Part shown: positions 11,664 to 31,800 of the stretch, piece by piece
Position numbering within the stretch: position 1 is the stretch's first letter
How the letters are laid out: every line of letters begins with the position of its first letter
Assembly (NCBI GenBank): GCA_051530055.1
Contig: CM121341.1
Coordinates: 14,486,784-14,550,783 of the forward strand
From: Neoechinorhynchus agilis
Lineage: Eukaryota > Animalia > Acanthocephala
DNA length: 64,000 bases
Direction: 5' to 3'
Program-made: the position numbers and the translations under genes
The notes under the pieces: generated by a model
Database searches by the model: none
Seen by the model: only the letters and a program-made list of their open reading frames with translations
What the model was told of the DNA's origin: nothing

Positions 11664-14131
11664 ATGGATCCGCTGCCTACGAAGCATTTAAAACGTCATA
11701 ATCGGTACCAGCCTATTATTGAACAAAAGGACGCAGGGAATTCAAATTTAGGTGGTCCGAGGATATTTGGACTTGCAGTGAGCAAGAGCGAAGATAAAAA
11801 ATTCGAAGTTGACTCCGACGATTCTATGGCATCCCAATGGAACCGTAGCCTTTATAGGCAATTTTTTAAAAAATTTCAAGTTTCCCCTGTTTAAATTTGT
11901 TGTGCCTTGTATTTTTTTAAGTTTTAAGCTCTTTAACAGTCGATTAAAAAATGAAGTTTTCATTTCGAGATAGTTTCGGAAAAAAGTTTCTTTAAATAGG
12001 TTTCATTAGGCTGCCTTTAAGGATTCGACTATTTTCAATGATTTTGATTCAACGGACGAGGTTGTCCATGAGCTCATGAGCGAATTACTGAAAGCAGTGG
12101 TCGGAGGAGCGAAGCATGAATATTCTTCGGAGAAAGCGTCTCAAGAAACCATTCCAGTCGCACCGATAACTGCTTTCCGAAGAGGTATTGTATCAGTATC
12201 CGACATATCCAGGCAAATGTGGTGCGAACAACAGCTTTCTTATTCTTTTATATATCCCTATATTGAAGATGAAGAGGGTAATATTGTGCGTGTGCATGAT
12301 TGTGAAGGAGAGCAAAGGGTTTTATTTATTATATAGGCCATCAAGAAATTTGCCTCCAAACTTAGTCCCTGTTCACAAACGTCCATAATCCGATGATTTT
12401 TATTCCTATACTAAAATAGATGGCTTATACGGCATTTCAATCGACCATCTTTCAATTTAAGGCCTAAAATGTTTCGCCATAAGGGTAAACCCATTTATTT
12501 TGAAGCCAATATACCTAACATTCACGAAACTTGGCCCCAAAGCAGGAAGCCGTTTAAGGAATCAGTTACACCCTTACATCGGCGTATAGACACGTTTTCG
12601 ATTTACTGCAAAAAAAATTTTCGCCGTAGCGGCAAAATCCTTGATTTCGAAGTGCAACTTTTTTATCATCTTAAGATTGAAATAATTTTACATTTTTTAA
12701 GATTCGATAGCAAAAACATTAATTTGATGTGAATGGACCTGAATGTAGCATACACGCTTACAAACTGTTATATGCCTAGCCGTCCTCGTCCTCAATTGTC
12801 GCCTAAATGCTTGCAGTGTTGCCTCTCAACACGGCCAAGTCTGATATTTCGAACCAGGTCAATACCTGGTTCCTTGCATCGCCGGTTATAACCTGAAGGC
12901 GTCGCTTCAGATCCCTCAGGAGTTGAAGAGCATCGCTACCAAGAGATCCGTAGGTCTCAGCCCCAAAAGGTGCAAACACATCGGCCCGGGCTTTTTAAAT
13001 TAAATAAAACGATAATATGCATTTTGAAATATGAACCTTGTTACATCTTTGACAAATTTGGAACCGATTCCATGACATTTATATTAATTTGTATCAGAAT
13101 ATTTTCGTTTTGCGGCCAAATTTCGTTGAACATAAGTGAGGTACGAATATATCGATCAAAAGCTATATTATATCATATAATTATCTGGTTTGGTAATTGT
13201 GAAGAAAATGACGTTATCCTCAAGATTTGAAAAATTCCGTTTTACTTTAAACGATCTCTCCTACTCATATCGAATAGATGACCAAGCTCATATGCGGGTA
13301 GGCACTGATCTTCATGAACAACGAGAGCTGGAGGTTCATGAAATAGTTGAACTCAGATGTCAAAACCGAACGCAATCCTACGCCGTTCGCCTCTTTAATA
13401 TGATTATTGGATTTGATCGTCTTTATGAGTTGATTCAGACGCACAAAGCTGGTGTAGTAAGAGAAGTCCCAATCTTCGGTCGTCCATTCGAAGGTGTGAA
13501 TCTGTATTTTCGCGGAATAATTGACGAGATCGGGTATGATCCAAAAGTTGGAAATGGTTTGAGTGTTGTCGAATTTAAAACAAGATCTAGACCTGGTCTA
13601 CCTTCGAATTCTCAAATGCTGACTCATAAGATACAGGTGAATATCTATAGGCAATTATTAAATCGTTTGATATTGGCTAAGGATATTCAAAGTCTGAAAG
13701 CAGAATATTTTCTGAAATTCGAGTTGGAACCAATGGAAGATCTCGTAGATGATAATTGTGACCCACAATTGCGTACGCTTCTCATCAGATACAAATGCTC
13801 AAATCTCTCTGATTTGTTTGATTTGGTCTTAACAAAGATCAAGCGATTGCCTGTTGTCCGGTATGGTTGGATTGAGTACATGTATCAAACGGACGAGAAG
13901 AAGGAACTAAACAAATCCAGTTTTATCGAATTCGACGCTAAGAATTTGCGCCTGATGTTAGTAGAGTACGAGAACTATTGGCTTGGCCAACGTGAATGCA
14001 ATGGTGTTGAAATTGAAGAAATATGGAAGTGCAATCGATGCGCTTACATTGACATTTGTGAGTGGCGCAGGAAAAAATCACGAGAAAAGACTGCGGAAAG
14101 TAGAAAGAGGAAAGCCAAACATACTTTGTGA
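11664..14131 (+). CDS. EXO5: Exonuclease V (4Fe-4S PD-(D/E)XK nuclease)
   Basis: SVSDISRQMWCEQQ, GTDLH, REVPIFG, GIIDEI, VVEFKTR, QVNIY and C-terminal CNRCAYIDICEW. Intron 12278-13277 joins GAG G/AT GAC in frame. The exon from about 12022 has an AG acceptor; using ORF 11664 as first exon is a guess. Confidence 0.88.
12790..12985 (-). mobile_element. 3' fragment of a CRE-like RLE non-LTR retrotransposon inside the EXO5 intron
   Basis: Minus strand reads PFGAETYGSLGSDALQLLRDLKRRLQVITGDAR...LAVLRGNTASI*AT, matching the C-termini of the elements at 58.7 kb and 60.4 kb (QRISLAIQRGNA). Confidence 0.75.
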
Positions 14132-14553: not shown

Positions 14554-14987
14554 GGTTAAAGAAATCGAATGCATCTGAGTTTGTCGAAAGAAGCACTCGA
14601 TGTATCGTGAAGGGGCTATGACTTATAACGAGCAAATACGCGTTTCGAACCTAAAACAAGTAGGTTTCTATTTCGAAATCTATATCAATCAATATTGAAG
14701 ATGTATTTCCTATCTTACGTGGACATTGATCGTGATTTGTTTAAGGCGATTTTTGCCTTGCGCTGTAGGACGCACACATACACTTCACAGCTGGCTCTCA
14801 CATGACGGCCTCGAGGGTTTGAGACTTGCAAGTTTGAAACCAAGATATGCCAAGTCCGCACTGCGTCACGTTTTTCATCAGCCGCAGAAATCAATGGACT
14901 TCATTTTTTTAGGCTTGACATTTTAACGGTTACCTATTTTCTGAATATCAAATGTTTTCTACGGATGGATTTATTTGACAATTTTGT

Positions 14988-16799
14988 TCACAAACGAAAT
15001 CTTATCAGATTTTCAATTTGACTTTTTTCTACTCCTTGTTGTAAAAGTGCTAGTGTCGCTCGACTAGAAAACAAATAATCATTATCGACGTCGATACCGT
15101 ATTGTTTGGCGAATCGAATTATTCGATCTACCTCAGCGTTGGAATTGATAATAGGATAGAAGTAATGAGCCTTTAGACGGTATCCCTGTTGATTGTGTAG
15201 CCATTCCATCACACGTAAAGAAGCATCCACGTTGTTCCTTTTCAAGGTTGCGTAAAGAGGACAATGACTAGCCCAAAATCGGTATGGTTCTACGGTCTCA
15301 TTTCCCACTACTGTCATCAGTCTTATTGGATCAACGTTCAGTTGAACACAATGATCCGCATAGCAGTTTAGAAACGATATCCAGCATTCAAAGTCGGGGT
15401 TGTGTGGGAGTGCCGCCACGAGTTTGGCTGCATCTTCACTTCTACCGTCCATAATTAGGTTCATTGCGTCGATATTGCATTGAAGAGAGATGGGAAGGAT
15501 AGGAAAACCATGTTGTCGTATAAAGTCAACACAAAGGTCGAACATCTCGCTTTTGGAATATCTAAGAATAATACTTCGAAACTGATTGTCCGACAGAAAA
15601 CAAAATGAATTGTCGAATTTCGTTCGTTTGTCCAAGTCGTATTTAACGATGGCATCTTGTTCGTTCAATTTGTTTTGGAGAACCGCCAGTACCGCTTTGA
15701 GCGCAATATGCGATTTATCAAATTTTCTTCGATTTCCACGACCAATATCATCTTGATCAAAATCAATTTCATCATTTGAAAACTCATCTAGAAGCTGCTG
15801 GGCTTCACTGTAGTTATTCATTCTAATATGACCTTCGACTAAGCATCGAAGAACTTTATCGACACGAATATTTACTCGCTTAAGAACATAAGCAGCTTTT
15901 TCAAGGTCACCGTCGAGGCAGTACCATTCGAGCATTAGAAGGTAACTCAGCTCGTTTAGACGGATCCGATTTAAGCTGGCATGAGCACGTTAATCTCAAT
16001 ATTCGCCCCAAAGAGAAAAATCACCAATTTTGCATATTTAAAATAGAAATTTGTATAAAAACGATGATGAACCAAATCTTTAAATTTGTTTTATATAGTA
16101 CACCATCTTCAAATTGTGAACGAGAATTCGCTGGATCTTTTCTTAAAAGTCAAATTTTGCCACCTTGCTCTAGGGAAAAACGAGTCTTAGTGCTCACACT
16201 AAAAAGCGAATTGTCATCCATCTTTCAGTATTTATTCAACATCCTAGTTTCGGGGTATATACAGAGATAGTATTGTAATAACATTTATAGTCATTGCAGT
16301 CAATAAAATTAATATTACGTTTTAAGGCTGATAATAAAATTGCAGTGATGCTATTGAGAATCACGTAAAATTACTCGTTAAAAAGATGATCAGGCGATAA
16401 AATTGTATCCGAAGGACGACGATTTTCAAGACCGATTTTCACAAAAGAGTTCAAATGAGATAGTTGGAACGGCTCAGGCAATAAATGTCTGAATTCTTTA
16501 AACATTTGTTCGGCTAAACGTTGTCTTGTTGATGGAATTTCGTCGATCAATACATTTCCAGTGCATCTTATTAACATTAAAGCATGTAGACTATCCAATG
16601 AGTCATTGGAAGTTACAGCGTTAAGCGCCCTTTCAACTTCAGTTATTAAAAGTTTTCCTTTTATCCTCACACTTCGATCCAGTTTTTCCATTAAAATACT
16701 TGGATTGTCGGTCCGAGTATAGACATGACGGCAGAGAATAGATCTTAACAACATCCGCTTAGCATTTAACATCTTAAACATTAAAGGACTAAAACTCAT
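14988..16799 (-). CDS. LRPPRC: LRPPRC/bsf-like mitochondrial pentatricopeptide-repeat protein (apparently short)
   Basis: N-terminal LDRSVRIKGK...HALMLIRCTGNVLIDEIPSTRQRLAEQMF...SHLNSFVKIGLEN resembles the LRPPRC/bsf N-terminus, preceded by a basic presequence-like leader. Helical-repeat ORF 14988-15935. 3' end may extend further. Confidence 0.7.
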
Positions 16800-16821
16800 T
16801 TCTGTGGTTAAAAAGACATGT

Positions 16822-18738
16822 TTTATAAGTACTCTATGCCAAATCCAAAATGAAATCCACTCTTAAACCTTTCGTTTTCCCCTACCAATAACGGCAACAC
16901 GTAGTTGAGTTCAATCCTTGCTTGTCTGAAAAAAGTGTATCTTATACCACATCCATAGGTTATTCTTGAGGACAAAGGACCTAATTCACGATAGAATGTT
17001 ATTGATTTACAGAATAAAGAAGCGCAGGTTTATTAAGTGCGCTCAAAATTCTGATTATGCAACTAGTGATAATTTTTTGAGTCAATAAAACCCAACGGCG
17101 TAATTTTTCCTTACCAATTTACGCCCTATGCCGAATGACTAATAATTCTCAATGAGTAAAAGTAGAACCGGCGACTGTGTCAGATTTTTCAACTCAAAAC
17201 GGTCATAAATTCAATTAGGAGTTGTTCTTAGAGCCCAGACAAGAGATCTTACTTTAACAAATCGATCATGACTTTACCTTCCGTTTTCACAGTTGAAGGA
17301 TACAATGTACCAACGTTAACAAATCCGTATATCTGAGCATCCCTTCTCAGTCTAGAACCATGCGTTTCAATATGAGACAGCCAAATTGAAATGCATTTGT
17401 TTTCCCTTTGAGAAAGGCAAGGGATGCACGAGTGTGCCACCAATGGCACAATATCGAGTTCCTCCTTCAAACTCGGAACCCGATAACTTTCCACCGCAGG
17501 TTCGTAAGTCGTACCCACGTATATTGTGAGGACCACCAAGAAAATATCGGTAGTACAACGGAGGAGAGATCGCTTGTGGTGACAAATTAACGATTGCTCC
17601 AGCTTGAGCACTTATATTAAATGTCTATCAAAGAATTGAGGATTGAAATTCGATTACGTGAGTCATCTTACAATGTCAGAATAAGGGAATTTAACGGGTT
17701 TAGACCAGAATTTGAAATCGGTCTTTAAAAAGGGTTGAGTGAGATCGAATGTGGATATTTCCCAGTTACAATTCAGTCTGATGTGATCTTCATCCAACAG
17801 ATTATTCGATCTAAACCTGATCTAAATTTGTATGCGAGAAATAAGAACGCTTAGCATGTAAAATACCAACTCCGTTCGTAATCCGCTTAAATTTCTGGAG
17901 CTCGGTCGATTGTCGAATTATTCGGTCCACAACTACATCGAATGTATAATCTAGTTCAAAATTATTTCTTAATTCCTAAATAAACGATAACTTTAGAAAA
18001 ATTAATATCTGTCATACATAGATTGAGTATTTAGCACCGATACCGTTTTGAGAATAATTAAAATCATTAGGTTTCATGTCGGCAATCGTTTTATGCCCGA
18101 AAACGGTAACTCTATGATTGACCCTCGATGGATTTGGAATTGAAGAATATCCAATCAAGTACTGACTACCACTTGTCTCCAACAATTGGCGTTCGTATTG
18201 AACATGAACCCCGTCACATCTTCCACTTACATTCGGAAACAGCATTGATAAGTTCTAAACAAGTGTCGTTGAAAACGAAATCGAATATTGAATTTCCGTT
18301 TTACCGAACTGGTCTGATTATTTTCCATATTAACCATTGCACTAGCATCTATGCGATTTTTTTCTCTGACCAGAATTTCTACCTTAAAAGACGCATCTTC
18401 GTCATCTAAACAATTTTCCTCGATAAAAGAGAAATGACCAATGTATTTAATTATAAATATACCGATTGTGTCCACCATAATGTGAACATCGTCAAAGGAT
18501 TCAGTTTGCCTTAAACGATCGTAGATTCCACTTAATGTGGACAGGAAAATGCTCAGAGTTTGTTGAGTGTTCCTTACTTCTTTCCCAACCAATCGATCCA
18601 GATACGATTTTTTTGTACGATTATATCCAACTATGTTTACCTCCTTCACATTTACCTGTTCAAAATCAAATGACAGGCTTTAAGCGTAGACTCGATCAGA
18701 ATAACCAATTGATCATGATTAAAAGATTGATGGTGCAT
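16822..18738 (-). CDS. SAMM50: Sorting and assembly machinery 50 (Omp85/BamA family)
   Basis: POTRA-like VNVKEVNIVGYNRTKKSY, barrel motif FLGGPHNIRGY, GFVNVGTL, and C-terminal ELNYVLPL...GFHFGFGIEYL* (stop 16822-16824). Several short introns. Start ATG 18738 inferred. Confidence 0.9.
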
Positions 18739-18999
18739 TATCTGAAATGATACAGAAGGATTATGATATAAACGGCGTGATTAGCTCTGACAAAATATGT
18801 TGTAGAAATGTTGAATTCTACCTGGAGGAGTGCAAAAATTCGCAACCGAACCTCGGTCTATCGCTTTGCACGTCTTCAATTTCGATGAATCGAAGGGAAT
18901 GTTTCATAACGATCTTTCTAAGTCGTTGAACACGATACACAGGGTGGAACATTTGTTCCAGAGAAGCTGAAAGCGACTATTGACTTTATTGCTTGCTAA

Positions 19000-20357
19000 T
19001 TAACTTGCAATGTCCCTGATATTGACGTTCGGTTTTTGTCTTCTGGCAACTTTCACTTTATGCGCTGGCAACTTCCATCCAATCGCATTGGTCAGTGTTC
19101 TCCCAATCTAGACACAAACATTCAAGAGAGAACAGACGACATAAGCGACTCTATAGGTCAGAGGAAGGCCTAAATTTCCATCAACCTCGACCTGGAACTT
19201 TTGCTTATAAATCCTTTCCGCCTCTTTTATAACATCTCTTCGTAACGATAAAGGGCGCTCAAGAGAACAATTAGTTTCCGCTCGTTGCTTTAAATCCCTA
19301 AATATTGATTTCAAATCCGGATACATCATCACGATACTGTCCATATCGACGGTTATCAAGACAAAGCCGGATGATTCCAAAAGTCCGATGAGACTCACAG
19401 GAGACAATTGTGGAGGGATATGAGAAGATATTGATCCTATTAAAGACATTTCAGCCAATTGGAGGGACAAACGTAATTCGAATAGTGAATCTTCGGTAAA
19501 CATGGACAATAGGAATGCACCACCTTCTTCTCCAGTTGGCAAGCAATCATAAACTCTTTTAAAGAATCCCGGCAAGTCGTTTATCCAATGTGATGTTAAA
19601 TTCGAACACACGAGATCAGGATTTAGCCCAGAAAGGTCCAAAGAATTCTCATCTATACTCACTCGTCCTTGAACTTCATAAGCTCCAACAAAATCATCTA
19701 TACCCAGTTCGGCGTCTTCATTTCGACGAGCTTCCAGTTGAGTGACGTAAGAGCTTTTAAAAGACGAACATATCGATTTTATCGAAATCAACGTACAATA
19801 ATTTAAAAAAATTCTAAAAGGATACAATCGCTCATTTCATTATTGATCAATGCGTTGTGTAAATAATGCCAGAACCAATTCAATGTACAAATCGGTGAAA
19901 TCAAGAACGACATCCGTTCGTTTATTTTGCAAGTGTGCGAAATAATTTTGAAAATTCGATTCAAATGATTTTATCGGCAAGGGGCTATTCAGAATATTGT
20001 TAAGGAGGGCATTAGAAGTTAAATTGGAAGAAAATCGATAAATCGACTGATAGATATATCGATGAAACGTTGATCAATATCAAAAAGGGCCAAATTTGCC
20101 GTATTTGGAAGATGACTAGTTAAGTACCCTTTATCGCAAAAGAATTCAACAATCTGATTGAACTTCTGCTTCTTAATGTCCAAAATACTTTCCGCCATCC
20201 TTGTACCAACGCATGACTTGACTACATCCTGGCAAGAAGGATAAAAGGATGCGATTCTTTGATAGGCCTTCAACTTAGAATCGAAAATGGCGTTCAATTT
20301 GTTAGATGCGATGAACCTGTGAAACTGGACACCAACATGCTTGGAAATCCGTTTCAT
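19000..20357 (-). CDS. NDUFAF5: Complex I assembly factor NDUFAF5 (methyltransferase fold)
   Basis: IFDSKLKAYQR, DLVCSNLTSHWINDLPG, SMFTEDSLFELRLSLQLAE, GFVLITVDMD, MYPDLKSIFRDLK, last exon IGWK. AATAAA on minus strand at 18985-18990. Confidence 0.9.
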
Positions 20358-20554
20358 TTACAATCCGGAATTGCCTTAGTCTTAAATTTAATGAAGATGT
20401 GGTACAGAAGAATGCTTTTGGGTTCAGATCCGACGTTTTTGTCGAAGTATTGGCCAATGATTTCGACAACGGATGCTTTAAAATCTAGTATTGGAAATGA
20501 CTGGTTTTAAGTATGTTGATCTGTAGCAGTTAAGAACATCACTTACGAATTTGT

Positions 20555-23500
20555 AGATCCCCGTCCAGATTCTCAAATACCTCCCGAGGAAGATGGACTC
20601 ATCAATGAGATTTTTCCTCCCTTCAGCGGCATCCCCTTTGGTTATGAGCCATTGCGAATAAATTGAACCACATCCATAAACAGGTTCGGCTCAAGTCCCT
20701 GACCACCGAATTTCGATGTAAACTGCCATGTGCTGGGGCGTTTGAATTATTTATCTTGGGTACGGTAAGAGTTTGTATTCCGTAGTTCTCAGATACCTCC
20801 GGGGATGACTATCAATGAGATTTTCCTCCCTTAGGCATCCTTGGTTATGAGCCATGGAGGATGGACTCATCAATGAGATTTTTCCTCCCTTCAGCGGCAT
20901 CCCCTTCGGTTATGAGCCATTGGCGATGATAAATTATGAACCATTTTGCCATCCATAAACAGGGATTCGGCTCTTAAGTCCACTAGACCACCTTGAAACT
21001 ATTCCGCAGTGTACAAACTCCGCCATTTTGTGCTTGAAGCAAGTATTGAATTATTTTATCTTATGTTTGGATAGACGGTAAAGAGTTTTGTATATTCCGT
21101 CCAGATTCTCAGAAAACTCCCGGGGAGAATGGACTCATCAATGAGATTTTTCCTCCCTTTAGCGGCATCCCCTTTGGTTATGAGCCATTGGCGATGATAA
21201 ATTATGAACCCTTTTACCATCCATAAACAGGGATTCGGCTCTTAAGTCCACTAGACCACCTTGAAACAATTCCGGAATGTACAAACTCTGCCATTTTGTG
21301 CCTGGGGCAAGTATTGAATTATTTTATCTTATGTTTGGATAGACGGTAAATAGTTTTTTATATTCCGTCCAGATTCTCAGAAAACTCCCGGGGAGGATGG
21401 ACTCATCAATGAGATTTTTCCTCCCTTTAGCGGCATCCCCTTTGGTTATGAGCCATTGGCGATGATAAATTGTGAACCATTTTGTCATCCATAAACAGGG
21501 ATTCGGCTCTTAAGTCCACTAGACCACCCTGAAACTATTCCGGAATGTACAAACTCTGCCATTTTGTGACTGGGGCAAGTATTGAATTATTTTATCTTAT
21601 GTTTGGATAGACGGTAAAGAGTTTTGTATATTCCGTCCAGGTTCTCAGATACCACCCGGGGAAGATGGACTCATCAATGAGATTTTTCCTCCCTTTAGCG
21701 GCATCCCCTTTGGTTATGAGCCATTGACGATGATAAATTATGAACCCTTTTGCCATCCATAAACAGGGATTCGGCTCTTAAGTCCACTAGACCACCTTGA
21801 AACTATTCCGGAATGTACAAACTCTGCCATTTTGTGCCTGGGGCAAGTATTGAATTATTTTATCTTATGTTTGGATAGACGGTAAAGAGTTTTGTATATT
21901 CCGTCCAGATTCTCAGATACCTCCCGGGGAGGATGGACTCATCAAATAGAGATTTTTCCTCCCTTTAGCGGCATCCCCTTTGGTTATGAGCCATTGGCGA
22001 TTATAAATTATGAACCCTTTTACCATCCATAAACAGGGATTCGGCTCTTAAGTCCACTAGACCACCTTGAAACAATTCCGGAATGTACAAACTCTGCCAT
22101 TTTGTGCCTGGGGCAAGTATTGAATTATTTTATCTTATGTTTGGATAGACGGTAAAGAGTTTTGTATATTCCGTCCAGATTCTCAGATACCTCCCGGGGA
22201 AGATGGACTCATCAATGAGATTTTTCCTCCCTTCAGCGGCATCCCCTTTGGTTATGAGCCACTGGCGATGATAAATTATGAACCATTTTGCCATCCATAA
22301 ACAGGGATTCGGCTCTTAAGTCCACTAGACCACCTTGAAACTATTCCGCAGTGTACAAACTCCGCCATTTTGTGCTTGAAGCAAGTATTGAATTATTTTA
22401 TCTTATGTTTGGATAGACGGTAAATAGTTTTGTATATTCCGTCCAGATTCTCAGAAAACTCCCGGGGAGGATGGACTCATCAATGAGATTTTTCCTCCCT
22501 TTAGCGGCATCCCCTTTGGTTATGAGCCATTGGCGATGATAAATTATGAACCCTTTTACCATCCATAAACAGGGATTCGGCTCTCCACAAGTCCACTAGA
22601 CCACGTTGAAACTATTCCGAAATGTACAAACTCCTGCCATTTTGTGCCTGGGACGAGTATTGAATAATTTTATCCTATGCTTGGATAGACGGTAAAGAGT
22701 TTTGTATATTCCGTCCAGGTTCTCAGATACCTCCCGGGGAAGATGGACTCATCAATGAGATTTTTCCTCCCTTTAGCGGCATCCCCTTTGGTTATGAGCC
22801 ATTGACGATGATAAATTATGAACCCTTTTGCCATCCATAAACAGGGATTCGGCTCTTAAGTCCACTAGACCACCTTGAAACTATTCCGGAATGTACAAAC
22901 TCTGCCATTTTGTGCCTGGGGCAAGTATTGAATTATTTTATCTTATGTTTGGATAGACGGTAAAGAGTTTTGTATATTCCGTCCAGATTCTCAGATACCT
23001 CCCGGGGAAGATGGACTCATCAATGAGATTTTTCCTCCCTTCAGCGGCATCCCCTTTCGTTATGAGCCACTTGCGATGATAAATTATGAACCATTTTGCC
23101 ATCCATAAACAGGGATTCGGCTCTTAAGTCCACTAGACCACCTTGAAACTATTGACGCAGTGTACAAACTCCGCCATTTTGTGCTTGGGGCAAGTATTGA
23201 ATTATTTTATCTTATGTTTGGATAGACGGTAAAGAGTTTTGTATATTCCGTCCAGGTTCTCAGATACCTCCCGGGGAAGATGGACTCATCAATGAGATTT
23301 TTCTTCCCTTCAGTTGCATCCCTTTGGTTATGAGCCACTGGCGATGATAAATTATGAACCATTTTGCCATCCATAAACAGGGATTCGGCTCTTAAGTCCA
23401 CTAGACCACCTTGAAACTATTCCGCAGTGTACAAACTCCGCCATTTTGTGCTTGGGGCAAGTATTGAATTATTTTATCTGATGTTTGGATAGACGGTAAA

Positions 23501-26500
23501 GAGTTTTGTATATTCCGTCCAGGTTCTCAGATACCTCCCGGGGAAGATGGACTCATCAATGAGATTTTTCCTCCCTTCAGCGGCATCCGCTTTGGTTATG
23601 AGCCACTGGCGATAATAAATTATGAACCCTTTTACCATCCATAAACAGAGATTCGGCTCTCAAGTCCACTAGACCACCTTGAAACAATTCCTAAATGTAC
23701 AAACTGCCATTTTGTGCCTGGGGCAAGTATTGAATTATTTTATCTTATGTTTGGATAGACGGTAAAGAGTTTTGTATATTCCGTTAAGATTCTCAGATAC
23801 CTCCCGGGGAAGATGGACTCAATGAGATTTTTCCTCCCTTCAGCGGCATCCCCTTCGGTTATGAGCCATTGGCGATGATAAATTATGAACCCTTTTACCA
23901 TCCATAAACAGGGATTCGGCTCTCAAGTCCACTAGACCACGTTGAATTTATTCCGAAATGTACAAACTCTGCCATTTTGTGCCTTGGGCAAGTATTGAAT
24001 TATTTTATCTTATGTTTGGATAGACGGTAAAGAGTTTTGTATATTCCGTCCAGATTCTCAGATGCCTCCCGGGGAAGATGGACTCAATGAGATTTTTCCA
24101 CCCTTCAGCCGCATCCCCTTCGGTTATGAGCCATTGGCGATGATAAATTAAGAACCCTTTTACCATCCACATAAACTGGGATTCGGCTCTCAAGTCCACT
24201 AGACCACGTTGAAACTATTCCGAAATGTACAAACTCTGCCATTTTGTGCCTGGGGCAAGTATTGAATTATTTTATCTTATGTTTGGATAGACGGTAAAGA
24301 GTTTTGTATATTCCGTCCAGATTCTCAGATACTTCCCGGGGAGGATGGACTCATCAATGAGATTTTTCCTCCCTTTAGCGGCATCCCCTTTGGTTATGAG
24401 CCATTGGCGATGATAAATTCTGAACCCTTTTGTCATCCATAAACAGGGATTCGGCTCTTAAGTCCACTAGACCACCTTGAAACTATTCCGCAGTGTACAA
24501 ACTCAACCATTTTGTGCTTGGGGCAAGTATTGAATTATTTTATCTTGTGTTTGGATAGACGGTAAAGAGTTTTGTATATTCCGTCCAGATTCTCAGATGC
24601 CTCCCGGGGAAGATGGACTCAATGAGATTTTTCCTCCCTTCAGCGGCATCCCCTTCGGTTATGAGCCATTGGCGATGATAAATTATGAACCCTTTTACCA
24701 TCCATAAACAGGGATCTGGCTCTCAAGTCCACTAGACCACGTTGAATTTATTCCGAAATGTACAAACTCTGCCATTTTGTGCCTGGGGCAAGTATTGAAT
24801 TATTTTATCTTATGTTTGGATAGACGGTAAAGAGTTTTGTATATTCCGTCCAGATTCTCAGATGCCTCCCGGGGAAGATGGACTCAATGAGATTTTTCCT
24901 CCTTCAGCGGCATCCCCTTTGGTTATGAGCCATTGACGATGATAAATTATGAACCCTTTTGCCATCCATAAACAGGGATTCGGCTCTTAAGTCCACTAGA
25001 CCACCTTTGAAACTATTCCGGAATGTACAAACTCTGCCATTTTGTGCCTGGGGCAAGTATTGAATTATTTTATCTTATGTTTGGATAGACGGTAAAGAGT
25101 TTTGTATATTCCGTCCAGGTTCTCAGATACCTCCCGGGGAAGATGGACTCATCAATGAGATTTTTCCTCCCTTCAGCGGCATCCCCTTTGGTTATGAGCC
25201 ATTGACGATGATAAATTATGAACCCTTTTACCATCCATAAACAGGGATTCGGCTCTCAAGTCCACTAGACCACGTTGAAACTATTCCGAAATGTACAAAC
25301 TCTGCCATTTTGTGCCTGGGGCAAGTATTGAATTATTTTATCTTATGTTTGGATAGACGGTAAAGAGTTTTGTATATTCCGTCCAGGTTCTCAGATACCA
25401 CCCGGGGAAGATGGACTCATCAATGAGATTTTTCCTCCCTTTAGCGGCATCCCCTTTGGTTATGAGCCATTGACGATGATAAATTATGAACCCTTTTGCC
25501 ATCCATAAACAGGGATTCGGCTCTTAAGTCCACTAGACCACCTTGAAACTATTCCGCAGTGTACAAACTCCGCCATTTTGTGCTTGGGGCAAGTATTGAA
25601 TTATTTTATCTTATGTTTGGATAGACGGTAAAGAGTTTTGTATATTCCGTCCAGGTTCTCAGATACCTCCCGGGGAAGATGGACTCATCAATGAGATTTT
25701 TCTTCCCTTCAGCGGCATCCCCTTTGGTTATGAGCCATTGGCGATAATAAATTATGAACCCTTTTACCATCCATAAACAGAGATTCGGCTCTCAAGTCCA
25801 CTAGACCACCTTGAAACAATTCCTAAATGTACAAACTATGCCATTTTGTGCCTGGGGCAAGTATTGAATTATTTTATCTTATGTTTGGATAGACGGTAAA
25901 GAGTTTTGTATATTCCGTTAAGATTCTCAGATACCTCCCGGGGAAGATGGACTCATCAATGAGATTTTTCCACCCTTCAGCCGCATCCCCTTTGGTTATG
26001 AGCCACTGGCGATGAGAAATTATGAACCATTTTGCCATCCATAAACAGGGATTCGGCTCTTAAGTCCACTAGACCACCTTGAAACTATTCCGCAGTGTAC
26101 AAACTCCGCCATTTTGTGCTTGGGGCAAGTATTGGAATTATTTTATCCTATGTTTGGATAGACGGTAAAGAGTTTTGTATATTCCGTCCAGATTCTCAGA
26201 TACCTCCCGGGGAAGATGGACTCAATGAGATTTTTCCTCCCTTCAGCGGCATCCCCTTCGGTTATGAGCCATTGGCGATGATAAATTATGAACCATCCAT
26301 AAACTGGGATTCGGCTCTCAAGTCCACTAGACCACGTTGAAACTATTCCGAAATGTACAAACTCTGCCATTTTGTGCCTGGGGCAAGTATTGAATTATTT
26401 TATCTTATGTTTGGATAGACGGTAAAGAGTTTTGTATATTCCGTCCAGATTCTCAGATACTTCCCGGGGAGGATGGACTCATCAATGAGATTTTTCCTCC

Positions 26501-29500
26501 CTTTAGCGGCATCCCCTTTGGTTATGAGCCATTGGCGATGATAAATTATGAACCCTTTTGTCATCCATAAACAGGGATTCGGCTCTTAAGTCCACTAGAC
26601 CACCTTGAAACTATTCCGCAGTGTACAAACTCTGCCATTTTGTGCCTGGGGCTTAGTATTGAATTATTTTATCCTATGCTTGGATAGACGGTAAAGAGTT
26701 TTGTATATTCCGTCCAGGTTCTCAGATACCTCCCTGGGAAGATGGACTCATCAATGAGATTTTTCCTCCCTTCAGCGGCATCCCCTTCGGTTATGAGCCA
26801 TTGGCGATGATAAATTATGAACCCTTTTACCATCCATAAACAGAGATTCGGCTCTCAAGTCCACTAGACCACCTTGAAACAATTCCTAAATGTACAAACT
26901 ATGCCATTTCTTGCCTGGGGCAAGTATTGAATTATTTTATCTTATGTTTGGATAGACGGTAAAGAGTTTTGTATATTCCGTTAAGATTCTCAGATACCTC
27001 CCGGGGAAGATGGACTCATCAATGAGATTTTTCCACCCTTCAGCCGCATCCCCTTTGGTTATGAGCCACTTGCGATGATAAATTATGAACCATTTTGCCA
27101 TCCATAAACAGGGATTCGGCTCTTAAGTCCACTAGACCACCTTGAAACTATTCCGCAGTGTACAAACTCCGCCATTTTGTGCTTGGGGCAAGTATTGAAT
27201 TATTTTATCTTATGTTTGGATAGACGGTAAAGAGTTTTGTATATTCCGTCCAGATTCCCAGATACTTCCCGGGGAGGATGGACTCATCAATGAGATTTTT
27301 CCTCCCTTTAGCGGCATCCCCTTTGGTTATGAGCCATTGGCGATGATAAATTCTGAACCCTTTTGTCATCCATAAACAGGGATTCGGCTCTTAAGTCCAC
27401 TAGACCACCTTGAAACTATTCCGCAGTGTACAAACTCCGCCATTTTGTCTTGGGGCAAGTATTGAATTATTTTTAGACGGTAAAGAGTTTTGTATATTCC
27501 GTCCAGGTTCTCAGATACCTCCCGGGGAAGATGGACTCATCAATGAGATTTTTCCTCCCTTCAGCGGCATCCCCTTTGGTTATGAGCCATTGGCGATGAT
27601 AAATTATGAACCCTTTTACCATCCATAAACAGGGATTCGGCTCTCAAGTCCACTAGACCACCTTGAAACAATTCCGAAATGTACAAACTGCCATTTTGTG
27701 CCTGGGGCAAGTATTGAATTATTTTATCTTATGTTTGGATAGACGGTAAAGAGTTTTGTATATTCCGTCAAGATTCTCAGATACCTCCCGGGGAAGATGG
27801 ACTCATCAATGAGATTTTTCCTCCCTTCAGCCGCATCCCCTTTGGTTATGAGCCACTGGCGATGATAAATTATGAACCATTTTGCCATCCATAAACAGGG
27901 ATTCGGCTCTTAAGTCCACTAGACCACCTTGAAACTATTCCGCAGTGTACAAACTCCGCCATTTTGTGCTTGGGGCAAGTATTGAATTATTTTATCTTAT
28001 GTTTGGATAGACGGTAAAGAGTTTTGTATATTCCGTCCAGATTCTCAGATACCTCCCGGGGAAGATGGACTCAATGAGATTTTTCCTCCCTTCAGCGGCA
28101 TCCCCTTCGGTTATGAGCCATTGGCGATGATAAATTATGAACCCTTTTACCATCCATAAACAGGGATTCGGCTCTCAAGTCCACTAGACCACGTTGAAAC
28201 TATTCCGAAATGTACAAACTCTGCCATTTTGTGCCTGGGGCAAGTATTGAATTATTTTATCTTATGTTTGGATAGACGGTAAAGAGTTTTGTATATTCCG
28301 TCCAGATTCTCAGATACCTCCCGGGGAAGATGGACTCATCAATGAGATTTTTCCTCCCTTCAGCGGCATCCCCTTTGGTTATGAGCCATTGGCGATGATA
28401 AATTATGAACCCTTTTGCCATCCATAAACAGGGATTCGGCTCTTAAGTCCACTAGACCACCTTGAAACTATTCCGGAATGTACAAACTCTGCCATTTTGT
28501 GCCTGGGGCAAGTATTGAATTATTTTATCCTATGCTTGGATAGACGGTAAAGAGTTTTGTATATTCCGTCCAGGTTCTCAGATACCTCCCGGGGAAGATG
28601 GACTCATCAATGAGATTTTTCCTCCCTTCAGCGGCATCCCCTTCGGTTATGAGCCATTGGCGATGATAAATTATGAACCATTTTGCCATCCATAAACAGA
28701 GATTCGGCTCTCAAGTCCACTAGACCACCTTGAAACAATTCCTAAATGTACAAACTATGCCATTTTGTGCCTGGGGCAAGTATTGAATTATTTTATCTTA
28801 TGTTTGGATAGACGGTAAAGAGTTTTGTATATTCCGTTAAGATTCTCAGATACCTCCCGGGAAGATGGACTCATCAATGAGATTTTTCCTCCCTTCAGCG
28901 GCATCCCCTTTGGTTATGAGCCACTGGCGATGATAAATTATGAACCATTTTGCCATCCATAAACAGGGATTCGGCTCTTAAGTCCACTAGACCACCTTGA
29001 AACAATTCCTAAATGTACAAACTATGCCATTTTGTGCCTGGGGCAAGTATTGAATTATTTTATCTTATGTTTGGATAGACGGTAAAGAGTTTTGTATATT
29101 CCGTCCAGATTCTCAGATACCTCCCGGGGAAGATGGACTCATCAATGAGATTTTTCCTCCCTTCAGCGGCATCCCCTTTGGTTATGAGCCATTGGCGATG
29201 ATAAATTATGAACCCTTTTACCATCCATAAACAGGGATTCGGCTCTTAAGTCCACTAGACCACCTTGAAACTATTCCGGAATGTACAAACTCTGCCATTT
29301 TGTGCCTGGGGCAAGTATTGAATTATTTTATCTTATGTTTGGATAGACGGTAAAGAGTTTTGTATATTCCGTCCAGGTTCTCAGATACCTCCCGGGGAAG
29401 ATGGACTCATCAATGAGATTTTTCCTCCCTTCAGCGGCATCCCCTTCGGTTATGAGCCATTGGCGATGATAAATTATGAACCCTTTTACCATCCATAAAC

Positions 29501-31800
29501 AGAGATTCGGCTCTCAAGTCCACTAGACCACCTTGAAACAATTCCTAAATGTACAAACTATGCCATTTTGTGCCTGGGGCAAGTATTGAATTATTTTATC
29601 TTATGTTTGGATAGACGGTAAAGAGTTTTGTATATTCCGTTAAGATTCTCAGATACCTCCCGGGGAAGATGGACTCATCAATGAGATTTTTCCTCCCTTC
29701 AGCCGCATCCCCTTTGGTTATGAGCCACTGGCGATGATAAATTATGAACCATTTTGCCATCCATAAACAGGGATTCGGCTCTTAAGTCCACTAGACCACC
29801 TTGAAACTATTCCGCAGTGTACAAACTCCGCCATTTTGTGCTTGGGGCAAGTATTGAATTATTTTATCTTATGTTTGGATAGACGGTAAAGAGTTTTGTA
29901 TATTCCGTCCAGATTCTCAGATACCTCCCGGGGAAGATGGACTCAATGAGATTTTTCCTCCCTTCAGCGGCATCCCCTTCGGTTATGAGCCATTGGCGAT
30001 GATAAATTATGAACCCTTTTACCATCCATAAACAGGGATTCGGCTCTCAAGTCCACTAGACCACGTTGAAACTATTCCGAAATGTACAAACTCTGCCATT
30101 TTGTGCCTGGGGCAAGTATTGAATTATTTTATCTTATGTTTGGATAGACGGTAAAGAGTTTTGTATATTCCGTCCAGATTCTCAGATACCTCCCGGGGAA
30201 GATGGACTCAATGAGATTTTTCCTCCCTTCAGCGGCATCCCCTTCGGTTATGAGCCATTGGCGATGATAAATTATGAACCCTTTTACCATCCATAAACAG
30301 GGATTCGGCTCTCAAGTCCACTAGACCACGTTGAAACTATTCCGAAATGTACAAACTCTGCCATTTTGTGCCTGGGGCAAGTATTGAATTATTTTATCTT
30401 ATGTTTGGATAGACGGTAAAGAGTTTTGTATATTCCGTCCAGATTCTCAGATACTTCCCGGGGAGGATGGACTCATCAATGTGATTTTTCCTCTATTTAG
30501 CGGCATCCCCTTTGGTTATGAGCCATTGGCGATGATAAATTATGAACCCTTTTGTCATCCATAAACAGGGATTCGGCTCTTAAGTCCACTAGACCACCTT
30601 GAAACTATTCCGCAGTGTACAAACTCCGCCATTTTGTGCTTGGGGCAAGTATTGAATTATTTTATCGTATGTTTGGATAGACGGTAAAGAGTTTTGTATA
30701 TTCCGTCCAGATTCTCAGATACCTCCCGGGGAAGATGGACTCATCAATGAGATTTTTCCTCCCTTCAGCGGCATCCCCTTTGGTTATGAGCCACTGGCGA
30801 TGATAAATTATGAACCATTTTGCCATCCATAAACAGGGATTCGGCTCTTAAGTCCACTAGACCACCTTGAAACTATTCCGCAGTGTACAAACTCCGCCAT
30901 TTTGTGCTTGGGGCAAGTATTGAATTATTTTATCTTATGTTTGGATAGACGGTCAGGTTTTTTCTATATCACCGTATATCCACGTCCAGATTCTCAGATA
31001 CCTCCCGAGGAGGATCGACTCATCAATGAGTTGTTTCCTCCCTTTAGCGGCATCCCCTTTGGTTATGAGCCATTGGCGTTTGTAGATTTTGAACCCCGTT
31101 TACCATCCATAAACAGGGATTTGGCTCTCAAGTCCACTAGACAATCTTGAAACATTCCCGCAATGTATATACTCTTCCAGTTTGTTCTTGGGGCAAGTAT
31201 TGAATTATTTTATCTTATCTTTTGGTAGACGGTAAAGAATTTTATATCGTCGTCCGAATTCTCCGATTAATCCCGAGGAATCGGGACTCATCAGTGAGTT
31301 TCCTTCTCTATTTCCACGGTATTTTATCCCTTTGGTTGTGAACCATCGGGGTTTTTTTATTTTGAACTCTTTTACACGCAGAAACAGGGATTTGGCTCTC
31401 AAGTCGTTTGTGCTTGTTGGGGCAAGTATTGAATTATTTTATCTTATGTTTTGATTGCCAATTACATTTTATTATCTTAGTGCTGTATACATCCCCCTTA
31501 CACGGCTTATAATTTTCCTTGGGCAAACGGCCTACCAATTCGGTCATGGAAACGCTGATCATCGCTAAAGATCCTGAACCACACGGTTATGAGTTTTGTA
31601 CATCCCTCAGAATCCGCAGATACCTTCCGAGGAGGAGGAACTCATCATTGAGTATATTTTAGCGATATTTCGTTTTGTTTGGTTATGAACCATCGGCGAT
31701 GATGTATTTCAAACCCTTTTACCAGTCAGAAACAAGGATTCGGCTCTCAAGTCCGCTAGACCATCTCGAAACAATTCCGCAATGTAGAAACTCTGCCACT
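20555..31800. repeat. Tandem satellite, about 268-bp unit, about 42 copies; homogeneous core, diverged edges
   Basis: gagatttttc at 21411, 21679 and so on. Units nearly identical over about 20.9-30.9 kb, progressively diverged at 30.9-31.8 kb, deleted or degenerate at 20.55-20.9 kb. Confidence 0.98.

What the first reader, a model, noticed from the sequence alone, without database searches (positions are those of the whole stretch)
14988..20357. Operon-like cluster of three mitochondrial genes: NDUFAF5 > SAMM50 > LRPPRC
Three unrelated but all mitochondrial genes are co-oriented. The SAMM50 stop (16822-24) is 22 nt from the first in-frame LRPPRC ATG (16799), and later Mets add under 70 nt. 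That gap is TTTTAACCACAG-AA-ATG, an acceptor with no room for a promoter. NDUFAF5 stop to SAMM50 ATG is about 260 nt with AATAAA then TTTCAG-ATA-ATG. Polycistronic transcription resolved by SL trans-splicing is established in nematodes, tunicates and flatworms, and C. elegans operons are enriched in mitochondrial genes; applying this here is inference. The converging EXO5 is mitochondrial in yeast.
Basis: partly seen in the sequence, partly recalled or inferred. Interest (0 to 1): 0.82.

Follow-up and report, generated by a model that had tools for sequence, protein, structure and literature searches.

The report
Trans-spliced three-gene mitochondrial operon candidate

Summary

**The genes.** Three minus-strand genes lie head to tail: NDUFAF5 (20357-19000), SAMM50 (18741-16823) and a short LRPPRC-like PPR protein (16772-14988). 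From stop codon to the next gene's 5' splice acceptor is 258 nt, then 50 nt.

**The leader.** RNA contigs from four runs carry the leader ...CGAATATTTAAAAACTTACAAGCA.
- It is absent from the 64-kb window.
- It shares the core AACTTAC(C)AAG with the bdelloid rotifer leader.

**Read-through.** Contigs run unbroken across both gaps. Depth is zero beyond the third gene's poly(A) site.

**Limits.** Trans-splicing is shown. Co-transcription from one promoter is probable (about 0.6) but not proven: no TSS data, contigs not single molecules.

**Corrections and context.**
- Gene 3 matches only the N-terminal third of LRPPRC (464 aa).
- The cluster is not conserved in Pomphorhynchus laevis.
- One run shows a second, unrelated leader at 16772.
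- Four hairpin-ended non-GT-AG introns in these genes break the NCBI models.

Earlier scan notes on other DNA of this genome had suspected trans-splicing. One reported a leader on another gene.

The parts
19000..20357 (-). Gene 1, NDUFAF5 (336 aa). Exons 20357-20051, 19757-19140 and 19085-19000. Stop TAA 19002-19000; AATAAA at 18990-18985.
   Evidence: RNA joints; model and stop codon; 37-42% identity to named NDUFAF5 proteins; alignment restores the conserved IGWK C-terminus.
18742..18999 (-). Intercistronic spacer 1 (258 nt), ending in the trans-splice acceptor TTTCAG (AG at 18743-18742).
   Evidence: Sequence. An X4 contig runs unbroken over 18704-19085. My back-calculation from the binned depths gives roughly 0-12 for the spacer in X1-X3, similar to retained introns.
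16823..18741 (-). Gene 2, SAMM50 (424 aa, 9 exons). The leader is joined at 18741, the ATG is at 18738 and the stop is TAA 16825-16823.
   Evidence: Leader loose ends at 18741 in X1, X2 and X3, and eight introns defined by joints; model; Pfam Omp85 and POTRA; Sam50/TamA chains in PDB.
16773..16822 (-). Intercistronic spacer 2 (50 nt), ending in the acceptor TTTAAG (AG at 16774-16773). It holds no AATAAA; a TATAAA overlaps the SAMM50 stop codon (16827-16822).
   Evidence: Sequence. Contigs X1 record 3 and X3 record 13 run unbroken over 16372-16982.
14988..16772 (-). Gene 3, a short LRPPRC-like PPR protein (464 aa). Exons 16772-16372 and 15981-14988. The leader is joined directly to the ATG at 16772. 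AATAAA at 14975-14970; transcripts end at about 14955-14968.
   Evidence: Leader at 16772 in X4 and a different leader in X2; model; intronless 462-aa ortholog in P. laevis; homology to the LRPPRC N-terminal region.
15982..16371 (-). Non-GT-AG intron (390 nt) with pairing ends, in gene 3.
   Evidence: Joint seen in all 4 runs and an unspliced form at low depth; intron ends; end pairing of -15.8 kcal/mol; the P. laevis ortholog is uninterrupted across this point.
17353..17401 (-). Non-GT-AG intron (49 nt) in SAMM50.
   Evidence: Joint in 4 runs; (-13.3 kcal/mol).
19086..19139 (-). Non-GT-AG intron (54 nt) in NDUFAF5.
   Evidence: Joint in 4 runs; (-15.9 kcal/mol); its removal restores the conserved IGWK motif.
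19758..20050 (-). Non-GT-AG intron (293 nt) in NDUFAF5.
   Evidence: Joint in 4 runs and an unspliced form at depth 3.6-6; (-13.5 kcal/mol).
20856..31298 (.). Satellite array (268-bp unit, 39 copies) that bounds the cluster upstream. No gene is annotated for 10 kb upstream of NDUFAF5.
   Evidence: Tandem Repeats Finder; NCBI gene list.
13208..14131 (+). Convergent EXO5 gene that bounds the cluster downstream.
   Evidence: Pfam Exo5 2.4e-36; NCBI model.

Best explanation
NDUFAF5, SAMM50 and a short LRPPRC-like gene of Neoechinorhynchus agilis form a spliced-leader-resolved operon, or at least a dicistronic SAMM50/LRPPRC-like unit.

Inferred: transcription starts upstream of NDUFAF5, in the roughly 200-500 nt between the satellite array and the ATG, and runs through all three genes.

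Inferred: each upstream mRNA is cleaved and polyadenylated a few tens of nucleotides past its stop codon. The signals would be AATAAA for NDUFAF5 and probably the TATAAA that overlaps the stop codon of SAMM50.

Shown: the downstream mRNAs receive their 5' ends by trans-splicing of a leader, at least 24 nt long, made elsewhere in the genome. It is joined at TTTCAG|A (18741) and at TTTAAG|ATG (16772). The 5' UTR of gene 3 therefore consists of the leader alone.

Suggestive: the leader is a diverged relative of the bdelloid rotifer leader. If so, the machinery would predate the split between bdelloids and acanthocephalans.
For: -: the same loose-end sequence (mRNA sense CGAATATTTAAAAACTTACAAGCA) sits at 18741 in runs X1, X2 and X3 and at 16772 in X4, each time immediately after an AG.
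- neither leader occurs in the 64-kb window with up to 3 mismatches.
- a 2362-nt contig in X4 joins spliced SAMM50 to spliced NDUFAF5 through the whole 258-nt spacer. Contigs in X1 and X3 run over 16372-16982, across the 50-nt spacer.
- by my back-calculation from the binned depths, the spacer is covered at roughly 0-12 in X1-X3, about the same as retained introns (3.6-15.5). Depth is 0 in all four runs just past the poly(A) site of gene 3, so leaky transcription or DNA contamination is unlikely.
- the gaps are 258 and 50 nt. Observed 3' UTRs are about 30 nt, so 50 nt can hold a 3' end but hardly a promoter.
- the leader aligns with the bdelloid leader GGCTTATTACAACTTACCAAGAG (PMC3795323, Table 1). 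Only about 2% of shuffled versions score as well.
- Inference: the loose ends stop at 22-25 nt. That is what a k=31 assembly graph would give if many transcripts share the leader.
- PMC7986045: distance cut-offs of 60-84 bp, and under 100 bp as the sole criterion, have been used to call operons in Oikopleura and Ciona, which also use a single leader.
Against: - The reads were available only as assembled contigs. A contig across two genes does not prove a single molecule.
- In X3 my back-calculated spacer depth is about 0.
- There is no TSS, CAGE or long-read evidence.
- The 5' end of NDUFAF5 is undefined. No leader was seen on it, and the one contig that reaches upstream merges with a plus-strand spliced transcript.
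- No poly(A) ends were seen for NDUFAF5 or SAMM50.
- In other animals a spliced leader is also added to genes that are not in operons.
- The 258-nt spacer, or the unusually long 297-nt last intron of SAMM50, could hold an internal promoter.
- In P. laevis the gene 3 ortholog stands alone: no SAMM50 or NDUFAF5 within 10 kb on either side.
- The leader on gene 3 rests on one run. Another run shows a different leader at the same site.
Confidence: 0.62

Rival explanations
1. These are three separately transcribed, closely packed genes. Each downstream gene has its own promoter: in the 258-nt spacer for SAMM50, and inside the SAMM50 gene body (for instance its 297-nt last intron) for gene 3. Trans-splicing only trims each gene's own outron. 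The bridging RNA would then be outron or long 3' UTR sequence.
For: In other animals a spliced leader is added to monocistronic genes as well (PMC7986045). Spacer 1 is long enough for a compact promoter. The last intron of SAMM50 is six times longer than its other canonical introns. The cluster is not conserved in P. laevis. Contigs cannot prove single molecules.
Against: With only 50 nt from the SAMM50 stop to the gene 3 acceptor, a gene 3 promoter would have to lie inside SAMM50. An X4 contig links spliced NDUFAF5 to spliced SAMM50 through the whole spacer. Coverage stops cleanly after gene 3, yet not between the genes.
Confidence: 0.3
2. The leader is a normal cis-spliced non-coding first exon of a distant shared promoter, joined alternatively to the SAMM50 or the gene 3 acceptor. 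It would not be a trans-spliced SL RNA.
For: The SL RNA gene itself was not found; the rest of the genome could not be searched with these tools.
Against: The leader is absent from the window, which reaches 43 kb upstream and 14 kb downstream. The cis introns here are 42-390 nt. A 10-kb satellite lies directly upstream. The leader resembles the bdelloid leader. The loose ends stop at 22-24 nt, as expected for a sequence shared by many transcripts. An earlier scan note (s1-038096) reports a non-local leader on a gene on another piece of the genome; I did not check it.
Confidence: 0.04
3. The loose ends are technical: adapter, template-switch oligo or assembly chimeras.
For: Several other loose ends in the same table are Illumina adapter sequence.
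Against: The leader differs from the adapter sequences seen in the same table. It recurs in four separately assembled runs, at two genes, each time exactly after an AG acceptor.
Confidence: 0.02

Closest known systems
Single-leader operons of tunicates (Ciona, Oikopleura) and the rare SL1-type operons of C. elegans
   Same: Co-oriented genes with tiny or no intercistronic space. One leader appears to serve both operon resolution and ordinary 5' end formation. The acceptor lies at or next to the start codon. Operons there have been called with cut-offs of 60-84 bp, or under 100 bp (PMC7986045).
   Different: This is a different phylum with an unrelated leader sequence. Spacer 1 (258 nt) is longer than the tunicate cut-offs. 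Polycistronic RNA is not shown as single molecules. A second leader seen once at gene 3 might mean more than one leader class.
Bdelloid rotifer spliced leader (Pouchkina-Stantcheva and Tunnacliffe 2005; sequence as given in PMC3795323, Table 1)
   Same: The host is in the same larger clade (Syndermata). The leader is short and A-rich, and it shares the colinear core TATT..A.AACTTAC(C)AAG (about 2% of shuffles score as well).
   Different: It is not identical: about 15 of the 19 aligned columns match, with gaps, and it ends in ...AAGCA rather than ...AAGAG. At least 24 nt were seen, against 23. The SL RNA gene, Sm site and cap were not examined. I found no description of operons for rotifers in the papers I could search; one paper lists rotifers among lineages with trans-splicing and operonic transcription (PMC12460157).
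C. elegans SL1/SL2 operons
   Same: Polycistronic units resolved by trans-splicing. Operon genes there are enriched for mitochondrial and RNA-handling functions (PMC1657053).
   Different: No SL2-type specialisation is shown here. The same leader is seen on both downstream genes. The single sighting of a second leader at the tightly spaced gene is only a hint.
Human LRPPRC (PDB 8ANY, chain A5)
   Same: Gene 3 and its P. laevis ortholog align colinearly with LRPPRC residues 77-448 (E=6.8e-18). LRPPRC is the best structural match. The N-terminus looks like a mitochondrial presequence (inference).
   Different: 464 aa against 1394 aa: the C-terminal two thirds are missing in both acanthocephalans. 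Pfam PPR hits are below threshold.

Membership tests
Spliced-leader-resolved metazoan operon | Adjacent genes on one strand with short intercistronic distance | tested here: met
   258 nt and 50 nt from stop codon to trans-splice acceptor. The neighbouring gaps are in the kilobase range, and a 10-kb satellite lies upstream.
Spliced-leader-resolved metazoan operon | Downstream genes carry a common leader joined at a 3' splice acceptor | tested here: met
   The same 22-24 nt are joined at 18741 (3 runs) and at 16772 (1 run), each directly after an AG.
Spliced-leader-resolved metazoan operon | The leader comes from a separate SL RNA gene (trans origin) | tested here: inconclusive
   The leader is absent from the 64-kb window at up to 3 mismatches. 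No Rfam SL family hits the window. The SL RNA gene could not be sought in the rest of the genome.
Spliced-leader-resolved metazoan operon | A polycistronic precursor spans the gene junctions | tested here: inconclusive
   Assembled contigs cross both junctions, and spacer depth is like intron depth. Contigs are composites, however, and no single-molecule evidence exists.
Spliced-leader-resolved metazoan operon | One promoter, with no internal transcription start | not testable with these tools
   No CAGE, 5' RACE or long reads were available. The 5' end of NDUFAF5 is unresolved.
Spliced-leader-resolved metazoan operon | The upstream mRNA is polyadenylated ahead of the downstream acceptor | not tested
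   No poly(A) loose ends were reported. AATAAA follows the NDUFAF5 stop; only a TATAAA overlapping the stop is available for SAMM50.
Bdelloid-type rotifer spliced leader | The 23-nt leader GGCTTATTACAACTTACCAAGAG | tested here: not met
   The sequences are related but not identical. The local alignment covers TATT..A.AACTTAC(C)AAG, and about 2% of shuffles score as well. I treat it as a diverged homolog, not the same leader.
LRPPRC | Sequence homology to LRPPRC rather than to PPR proteins in general | tested here: met
   The profile matches human LRPPRC at E=6.8e-18 over residues 77-448; the next hits are designed PPR proteins at about 1e-8. Vertebrate LRPPRC tops both Foldseek searches.
LRPPRC | Full-length architecture of about 1400 aa | tested here: not met
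   464 aa from an RNA-defined start, stop and poly(A) region. The P. laevis ortholog has 462 aa.
SAMM50 / Sam50 | A eukaryotic Omp85 beta-barrel with an N-terminal POTRA domain | tested here: met
   Omp85 scores above the Pfam cut-off on a single exon. POTRA is weak (E=0.03). Sam50 and TamA chains are hit in PDB. The full-length protein was not scanned because it has no reference.
NDUFAF5 | Orthology to the NDUFAF5 methyltransferase-fold proteins | tested here: met
   37-42% identity to proteins named NDUFAF5 in Hydra and Plectus. The WINDLP, LFELR..LQLAE and IGWK blocks are conserved. The glycine-rich motif I is degenerate.

The most novel reading that the evidence does not exclude
Acanthocephalans may use two classes of spliced leader. 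The major one is related to the bdelloid leader. The second, unrelated one (TTTATTATTTCTCACTACTTTAACA) was seen here only on the gene that follows its neighbour by 50 nt. If so, this would be an SL2-like specialisation for tightly spaced downstream operon genes, evolved independently of nematodes.
Probability: 0.1. Interest if true: 0.8.

Novelty: new member of a known kind. Interest (0 to 1): 0.62.

Why it matters
**Where trans-splicing was known.** In the searchable literature, spliced-leader trans-splicing within Syndermata is reported only for bdelloid rotifers. It was reported absent from a monogonont (PMC1925144). I found no report of it, or of operons, for acanthocephalans.

**What this locus adds.** A leader sequence read directly from RNA, related to the bdelloid one, makes it testable whether the machinery predates the split between bdelloids and acanthocephalans. 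It also gives the probe sequence needed for a genome-wide survey of trans-splicing and operons in this parasite.

**Practical consequence.** Trans-splicing and the non-GT-AG introns together explain why four NCBI gene models in this 5-kb stretch are truncated or split. Re-annotation that allows for both would change the gene catalogue used for drug-target and comparative work on these fish parasites.

Tried and rejected
- Rfam at gathering thresholds over the whole window: no hit, so no known SL RNA family. tRNA scan: none.
- Both leaders searched in the window with up to 3 mismatches: none.
- The main leader searched in JGI metagenome contigs: none.
- I tried to reach RNA contigs of other genes through the look-up of encoding contigs, to test how general the leader is. 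Only the NCBI genome record holds these proteins, so generality could not be tested.
- Synteny test in Pomphorhynchus laevis: the gene 3 ortholog has no SAMM50 or NDUFAF5 within 10 kb. Conservation therefore cannot be used as support.
- Word-based homolog search for gene 3 found only the protein itself. The exhaustive HMMER search found one relative.
- The second leader shows no significant similarity to the first or to the bdelloid leader. It stays unexplained.
- I rejected reading gene 3 as PTCD2 or MRPS27, which the language-model neighbours hinted at, because LRPPRC is the clear best hit by profile and by fold.
- Full-length SAMM50 and full-length gene 3 were not sent to any search tool, because a spliced protein has no reference. 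Exons were searched separately.


Full report
**Organism and setting.** The window is part of chromosome CM121341.1 of the Neoechinorhynchus agilis assembly GCA_051530055.1. N. agilis is an acanthocephalan, a thorny-headed worm. Earlier scan notes gave the organism as a lead, and the NCBI protein names confirm it. The finding concerns three minus-strand genes between 20357 and 14988. Upstream, the cluster is bounded by a 10.4-kb satellite (268-bp unit, 39 copies, 20856-31298), and no gene is annotated for 10 kb. Downstream it is bounded by a convergent EXO5 gene (13208-14131, Pfam Exo5 2.4e-36).

**RNA evidence.** Four RNA runs of this species hold 72-73% of the sampled words of the stretch. 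I laid their contigs on 14750-20700. They identify themselves as RNA because eleven introns are removed. Three results matter.

- Leader. Contigs of SAMM50 end at 18741 in a sequence that does not match the locus. In mRNA sense it reads CGAATATTTAAAAACTTACAAGCA (24, 23 and 16 nt in X1, X2 and X3; in X3 it runs into adapter). The same 22 nt are joined at 16772 on the gene 3 contig of X4. Both junctions lie directly after an AG: TTTCAG|ATAATG and TTTAAG|ATG. The leader is absent from the whole 64-kb window at up to 3 mismatches.
- Read-through. A 2362-nt contig in X4 links spliced SAMM50 to spliced NDUFAF5 through the entire spacer (18704-19085 is unbroken). Contigs in X1 and X3 run unbroken over 16372-16982, across the SAMM50 stop and the gene 3 start.
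- Depth. Depth just past the poly(A) region of gene 3 (14750-14948) is 0 in all four runs. By my back-calculation from the binned depths, the first spacer is covered at roughly 0-12, about the same as retained introns (3.6-15.5). This argues against DNA contamination and against general leaky transcription.

**Gene models.** The joints give the following models.

- NDUFAF5: 336 aa, exons 20357-20051, 19757-19140 and 19085-19000.
- SAMM50: 424 aa in nine exons, ATG at 18738, stop at 16825-16823.
- Gene 3: 464 aa, exons 16772-16372 and 15981-14988.

The stop-to-acceptor gaps are 258 nt and 50 nt. AATAAA follows the stops of NDUFAF5 (18990-18985) and of gene 3 (14975-14970). Gene 3 transcripts end 5-20 nt after that signal, so 3' UTRs here are about 30 nt. 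SAMM50 has no AATAAA in its 50-nt gap; a TATAAA overlaps its stop codon. That this is its poly(A) signal is an inference.

**Gene identities.**

- NDUFAF5: 37-42% identity to proteins named NDUFAF5. The RNA-based model restores the conserved C-terminal IGWK block, which the NCBI model lacks.
- SAMM50: Omp85 scores above the Pfam cut-off on a single exon, POTRA is weak, and Sam50 and TamA chains are hit in PDB.
- Gene 3: its only detectable relative among 1.8 billion representative proteins is a 462-aa intronless protein of Pomphorhynchus laevis. A profile of the two matches human LRPPRC residues 77-448 at E=6.8e-18, and LRPPRC tops both Foldseek searches of the model (model pLDDT 69). It is therefore an LRPPRC homolog, but only one third of the length.

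**Comparison with known systems.** The bdelloid rotifer leader is GGCTTATTACAACTTACCAAGAG (PMC3795323, Table 1). The leader found here aligns with it over TATT..A.AACTTAC(C)AAG, colinearly and near the 3' end in both. About 2% of shuffled versions score as well. This is suggestive of homology but not conclusive.

I found no report of spliced leaders, trans-splicing or operons in acanthocephalans. Two full-text searches gave nothing relevant. The N. agilis genome and transcriptome paper and a comparative Syndermata paper contain none of the terms. A 2007 EST study found no leader in the monogonont Brachionus.

Operons in Ciona and Oikopleura, which use a single leader, have been called with distance cut-offs of 60-84 bp, or under 100 bp as the sole criterion (PMC7986045). 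The 50-nt gap falls inside these cut-offs and the 258-nt gap does not. [quoted passage not shown]

**What is shown and what is inferred.**

- Shown: the three genes and their spacing, the leader at two acceptors, the absence of the leader from the locus, and RNA covering both gaps.
- Inferred: that a single promoter drives all three genes, where the upstream mRNAs are cleaved, and that the leader is shared genome-wide.

The last point rests on three things: the leader appears on two genes, the loose ends stop at 22-25 nt (as a k=31 assembly graph would produce for a shared sequence), and an earlier scan note (s1-038096) reports a non-local leader on a gene elsewhere. I did not check that note. 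I put trans-splicing at about 0.93 and co-transcription of at least SAMM50 with gene 3 at about 0.6.

**Points against the operon.**

- Contigs are composites.
- One run has no coverage in spacer 1.
- The 5' end of NDUFAF5 is unresolved. The only contig that reaches upstream merges with a plus-strand transcript, which has a GT-AG intron at 20511-20556.
- The 297-nt last intron of SAMM50 could hold an internal promoter.
- The P. laevis ortholog of gene 3 stands alone, with no SAMM50 or NDUFAF5 within 10 kb.
- By my own rough estimate, a run of three adjacent mitochondrial genes is expected by chance a few times in a genome of this size. The shared function is therefore not evidence on its own.

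**Unexplained.** In run X2 the major gene 3 contig carries a different 25-nt leader at the same acceptor: TTTATTATTTCTCACTACTTTAACA. It too is absent from the window and is unrelated to the first leader or to the bdelloid one. It may belong to a second leader class; it is a single sighting.

**Side result.** Four of the eleven introns lack GT-AG: 15982-16371, 17353-17401, 19086-19139 and 19758-20050. All four runs show them removed exactly, and for the two long ones (15982-16371, 19758-20050) unspliced forms are present at low depth. Their ends pair at -13 to -16 kcal/mol, against -4 to -9.5 for the short canonical introns. The scan has described this intron class many times in this genome.

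At this locus these introns explain the NCBI annotation:

- NDUFAF5 is truncated to 291 aa.
- SAMM50 is truncated to 307 aa.
- Gene 3 is split into a 142-aa gene and a 330-aa gene.

Noticed in passing
window 15982-16371, 17353-17401, 19086-19139, 19758-20050 (minus strand): Four non-GT-AG introns with base-pairing ends (-13 to -16 kcal/mol) are removed exactly from the RNA in all four runs. The two long ones are also seen unspliced at low depth. They are further RNA-confirmed examples of the hairpin-ended intron class that this scan has already noted many times in this genome.
   Followed up: partly
window 14988-20357; L003 10001-15370: The NCBI gene models are broken at these introns and at the trans-splice site. 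NDUFAF5 is 291 aa and lacks the conserved C-terminus. SAMM50 is 307 aa and is cut at both ends. Gene 3 is split into a 142-aa gene (starting at 16799, 9 codons too early) and a 330-aa gene.
   Followed up: yes
window 16772 (run X2): A second 25-nt leader, TTTATTATTTCTCACTACTTTAACA, is joined at the same acceptor as the main leader. It is absent from the window and unrelated to the main leader or the bdelloid leader. It was seen once.
   Followed up: partly
window 20856-31298, with partial copies from about 20560: A 10.4-kb satellite (268-bp unit, 39 copies, 93% matches) lies directly upstream of NDUFAF5. It is transcribed: loose ends at 20651 and 20654 are variant copies. A plus-strand GT-AG intron at 20511-20556 links the NDUFAF5 5' region to the satellite in one run.
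   Followed up: no
window about 20150-20130 (NDUFAF5 exon 1): The glycine-rich SAM-binding motif I of NDUFAF5 (LD.G.G.G in the homologs) reads VEFFCDKG here, so cofactor binding may be altered. An extra 17-residue insert follows it.
   Followed up: no
L001 10001-11389 (Pomphorhynchus laevis): The LRPPRC-like protein is short (462 aa) and intronless in P. laevis as well. The truncation to the N-terminal third is therefore shared by two acanthocephalan classes, whereas the 390-nt intron is specific to N. agilis.
   Followed up: partly
window 16981-17277: The only long canonical GT-AG intron of SAMM50 (297 nt) also has pairing ends (-12 kcal/mol). It may derive from the same kind of inserted element, or it may hold an internal promoter.
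   Followed up: no
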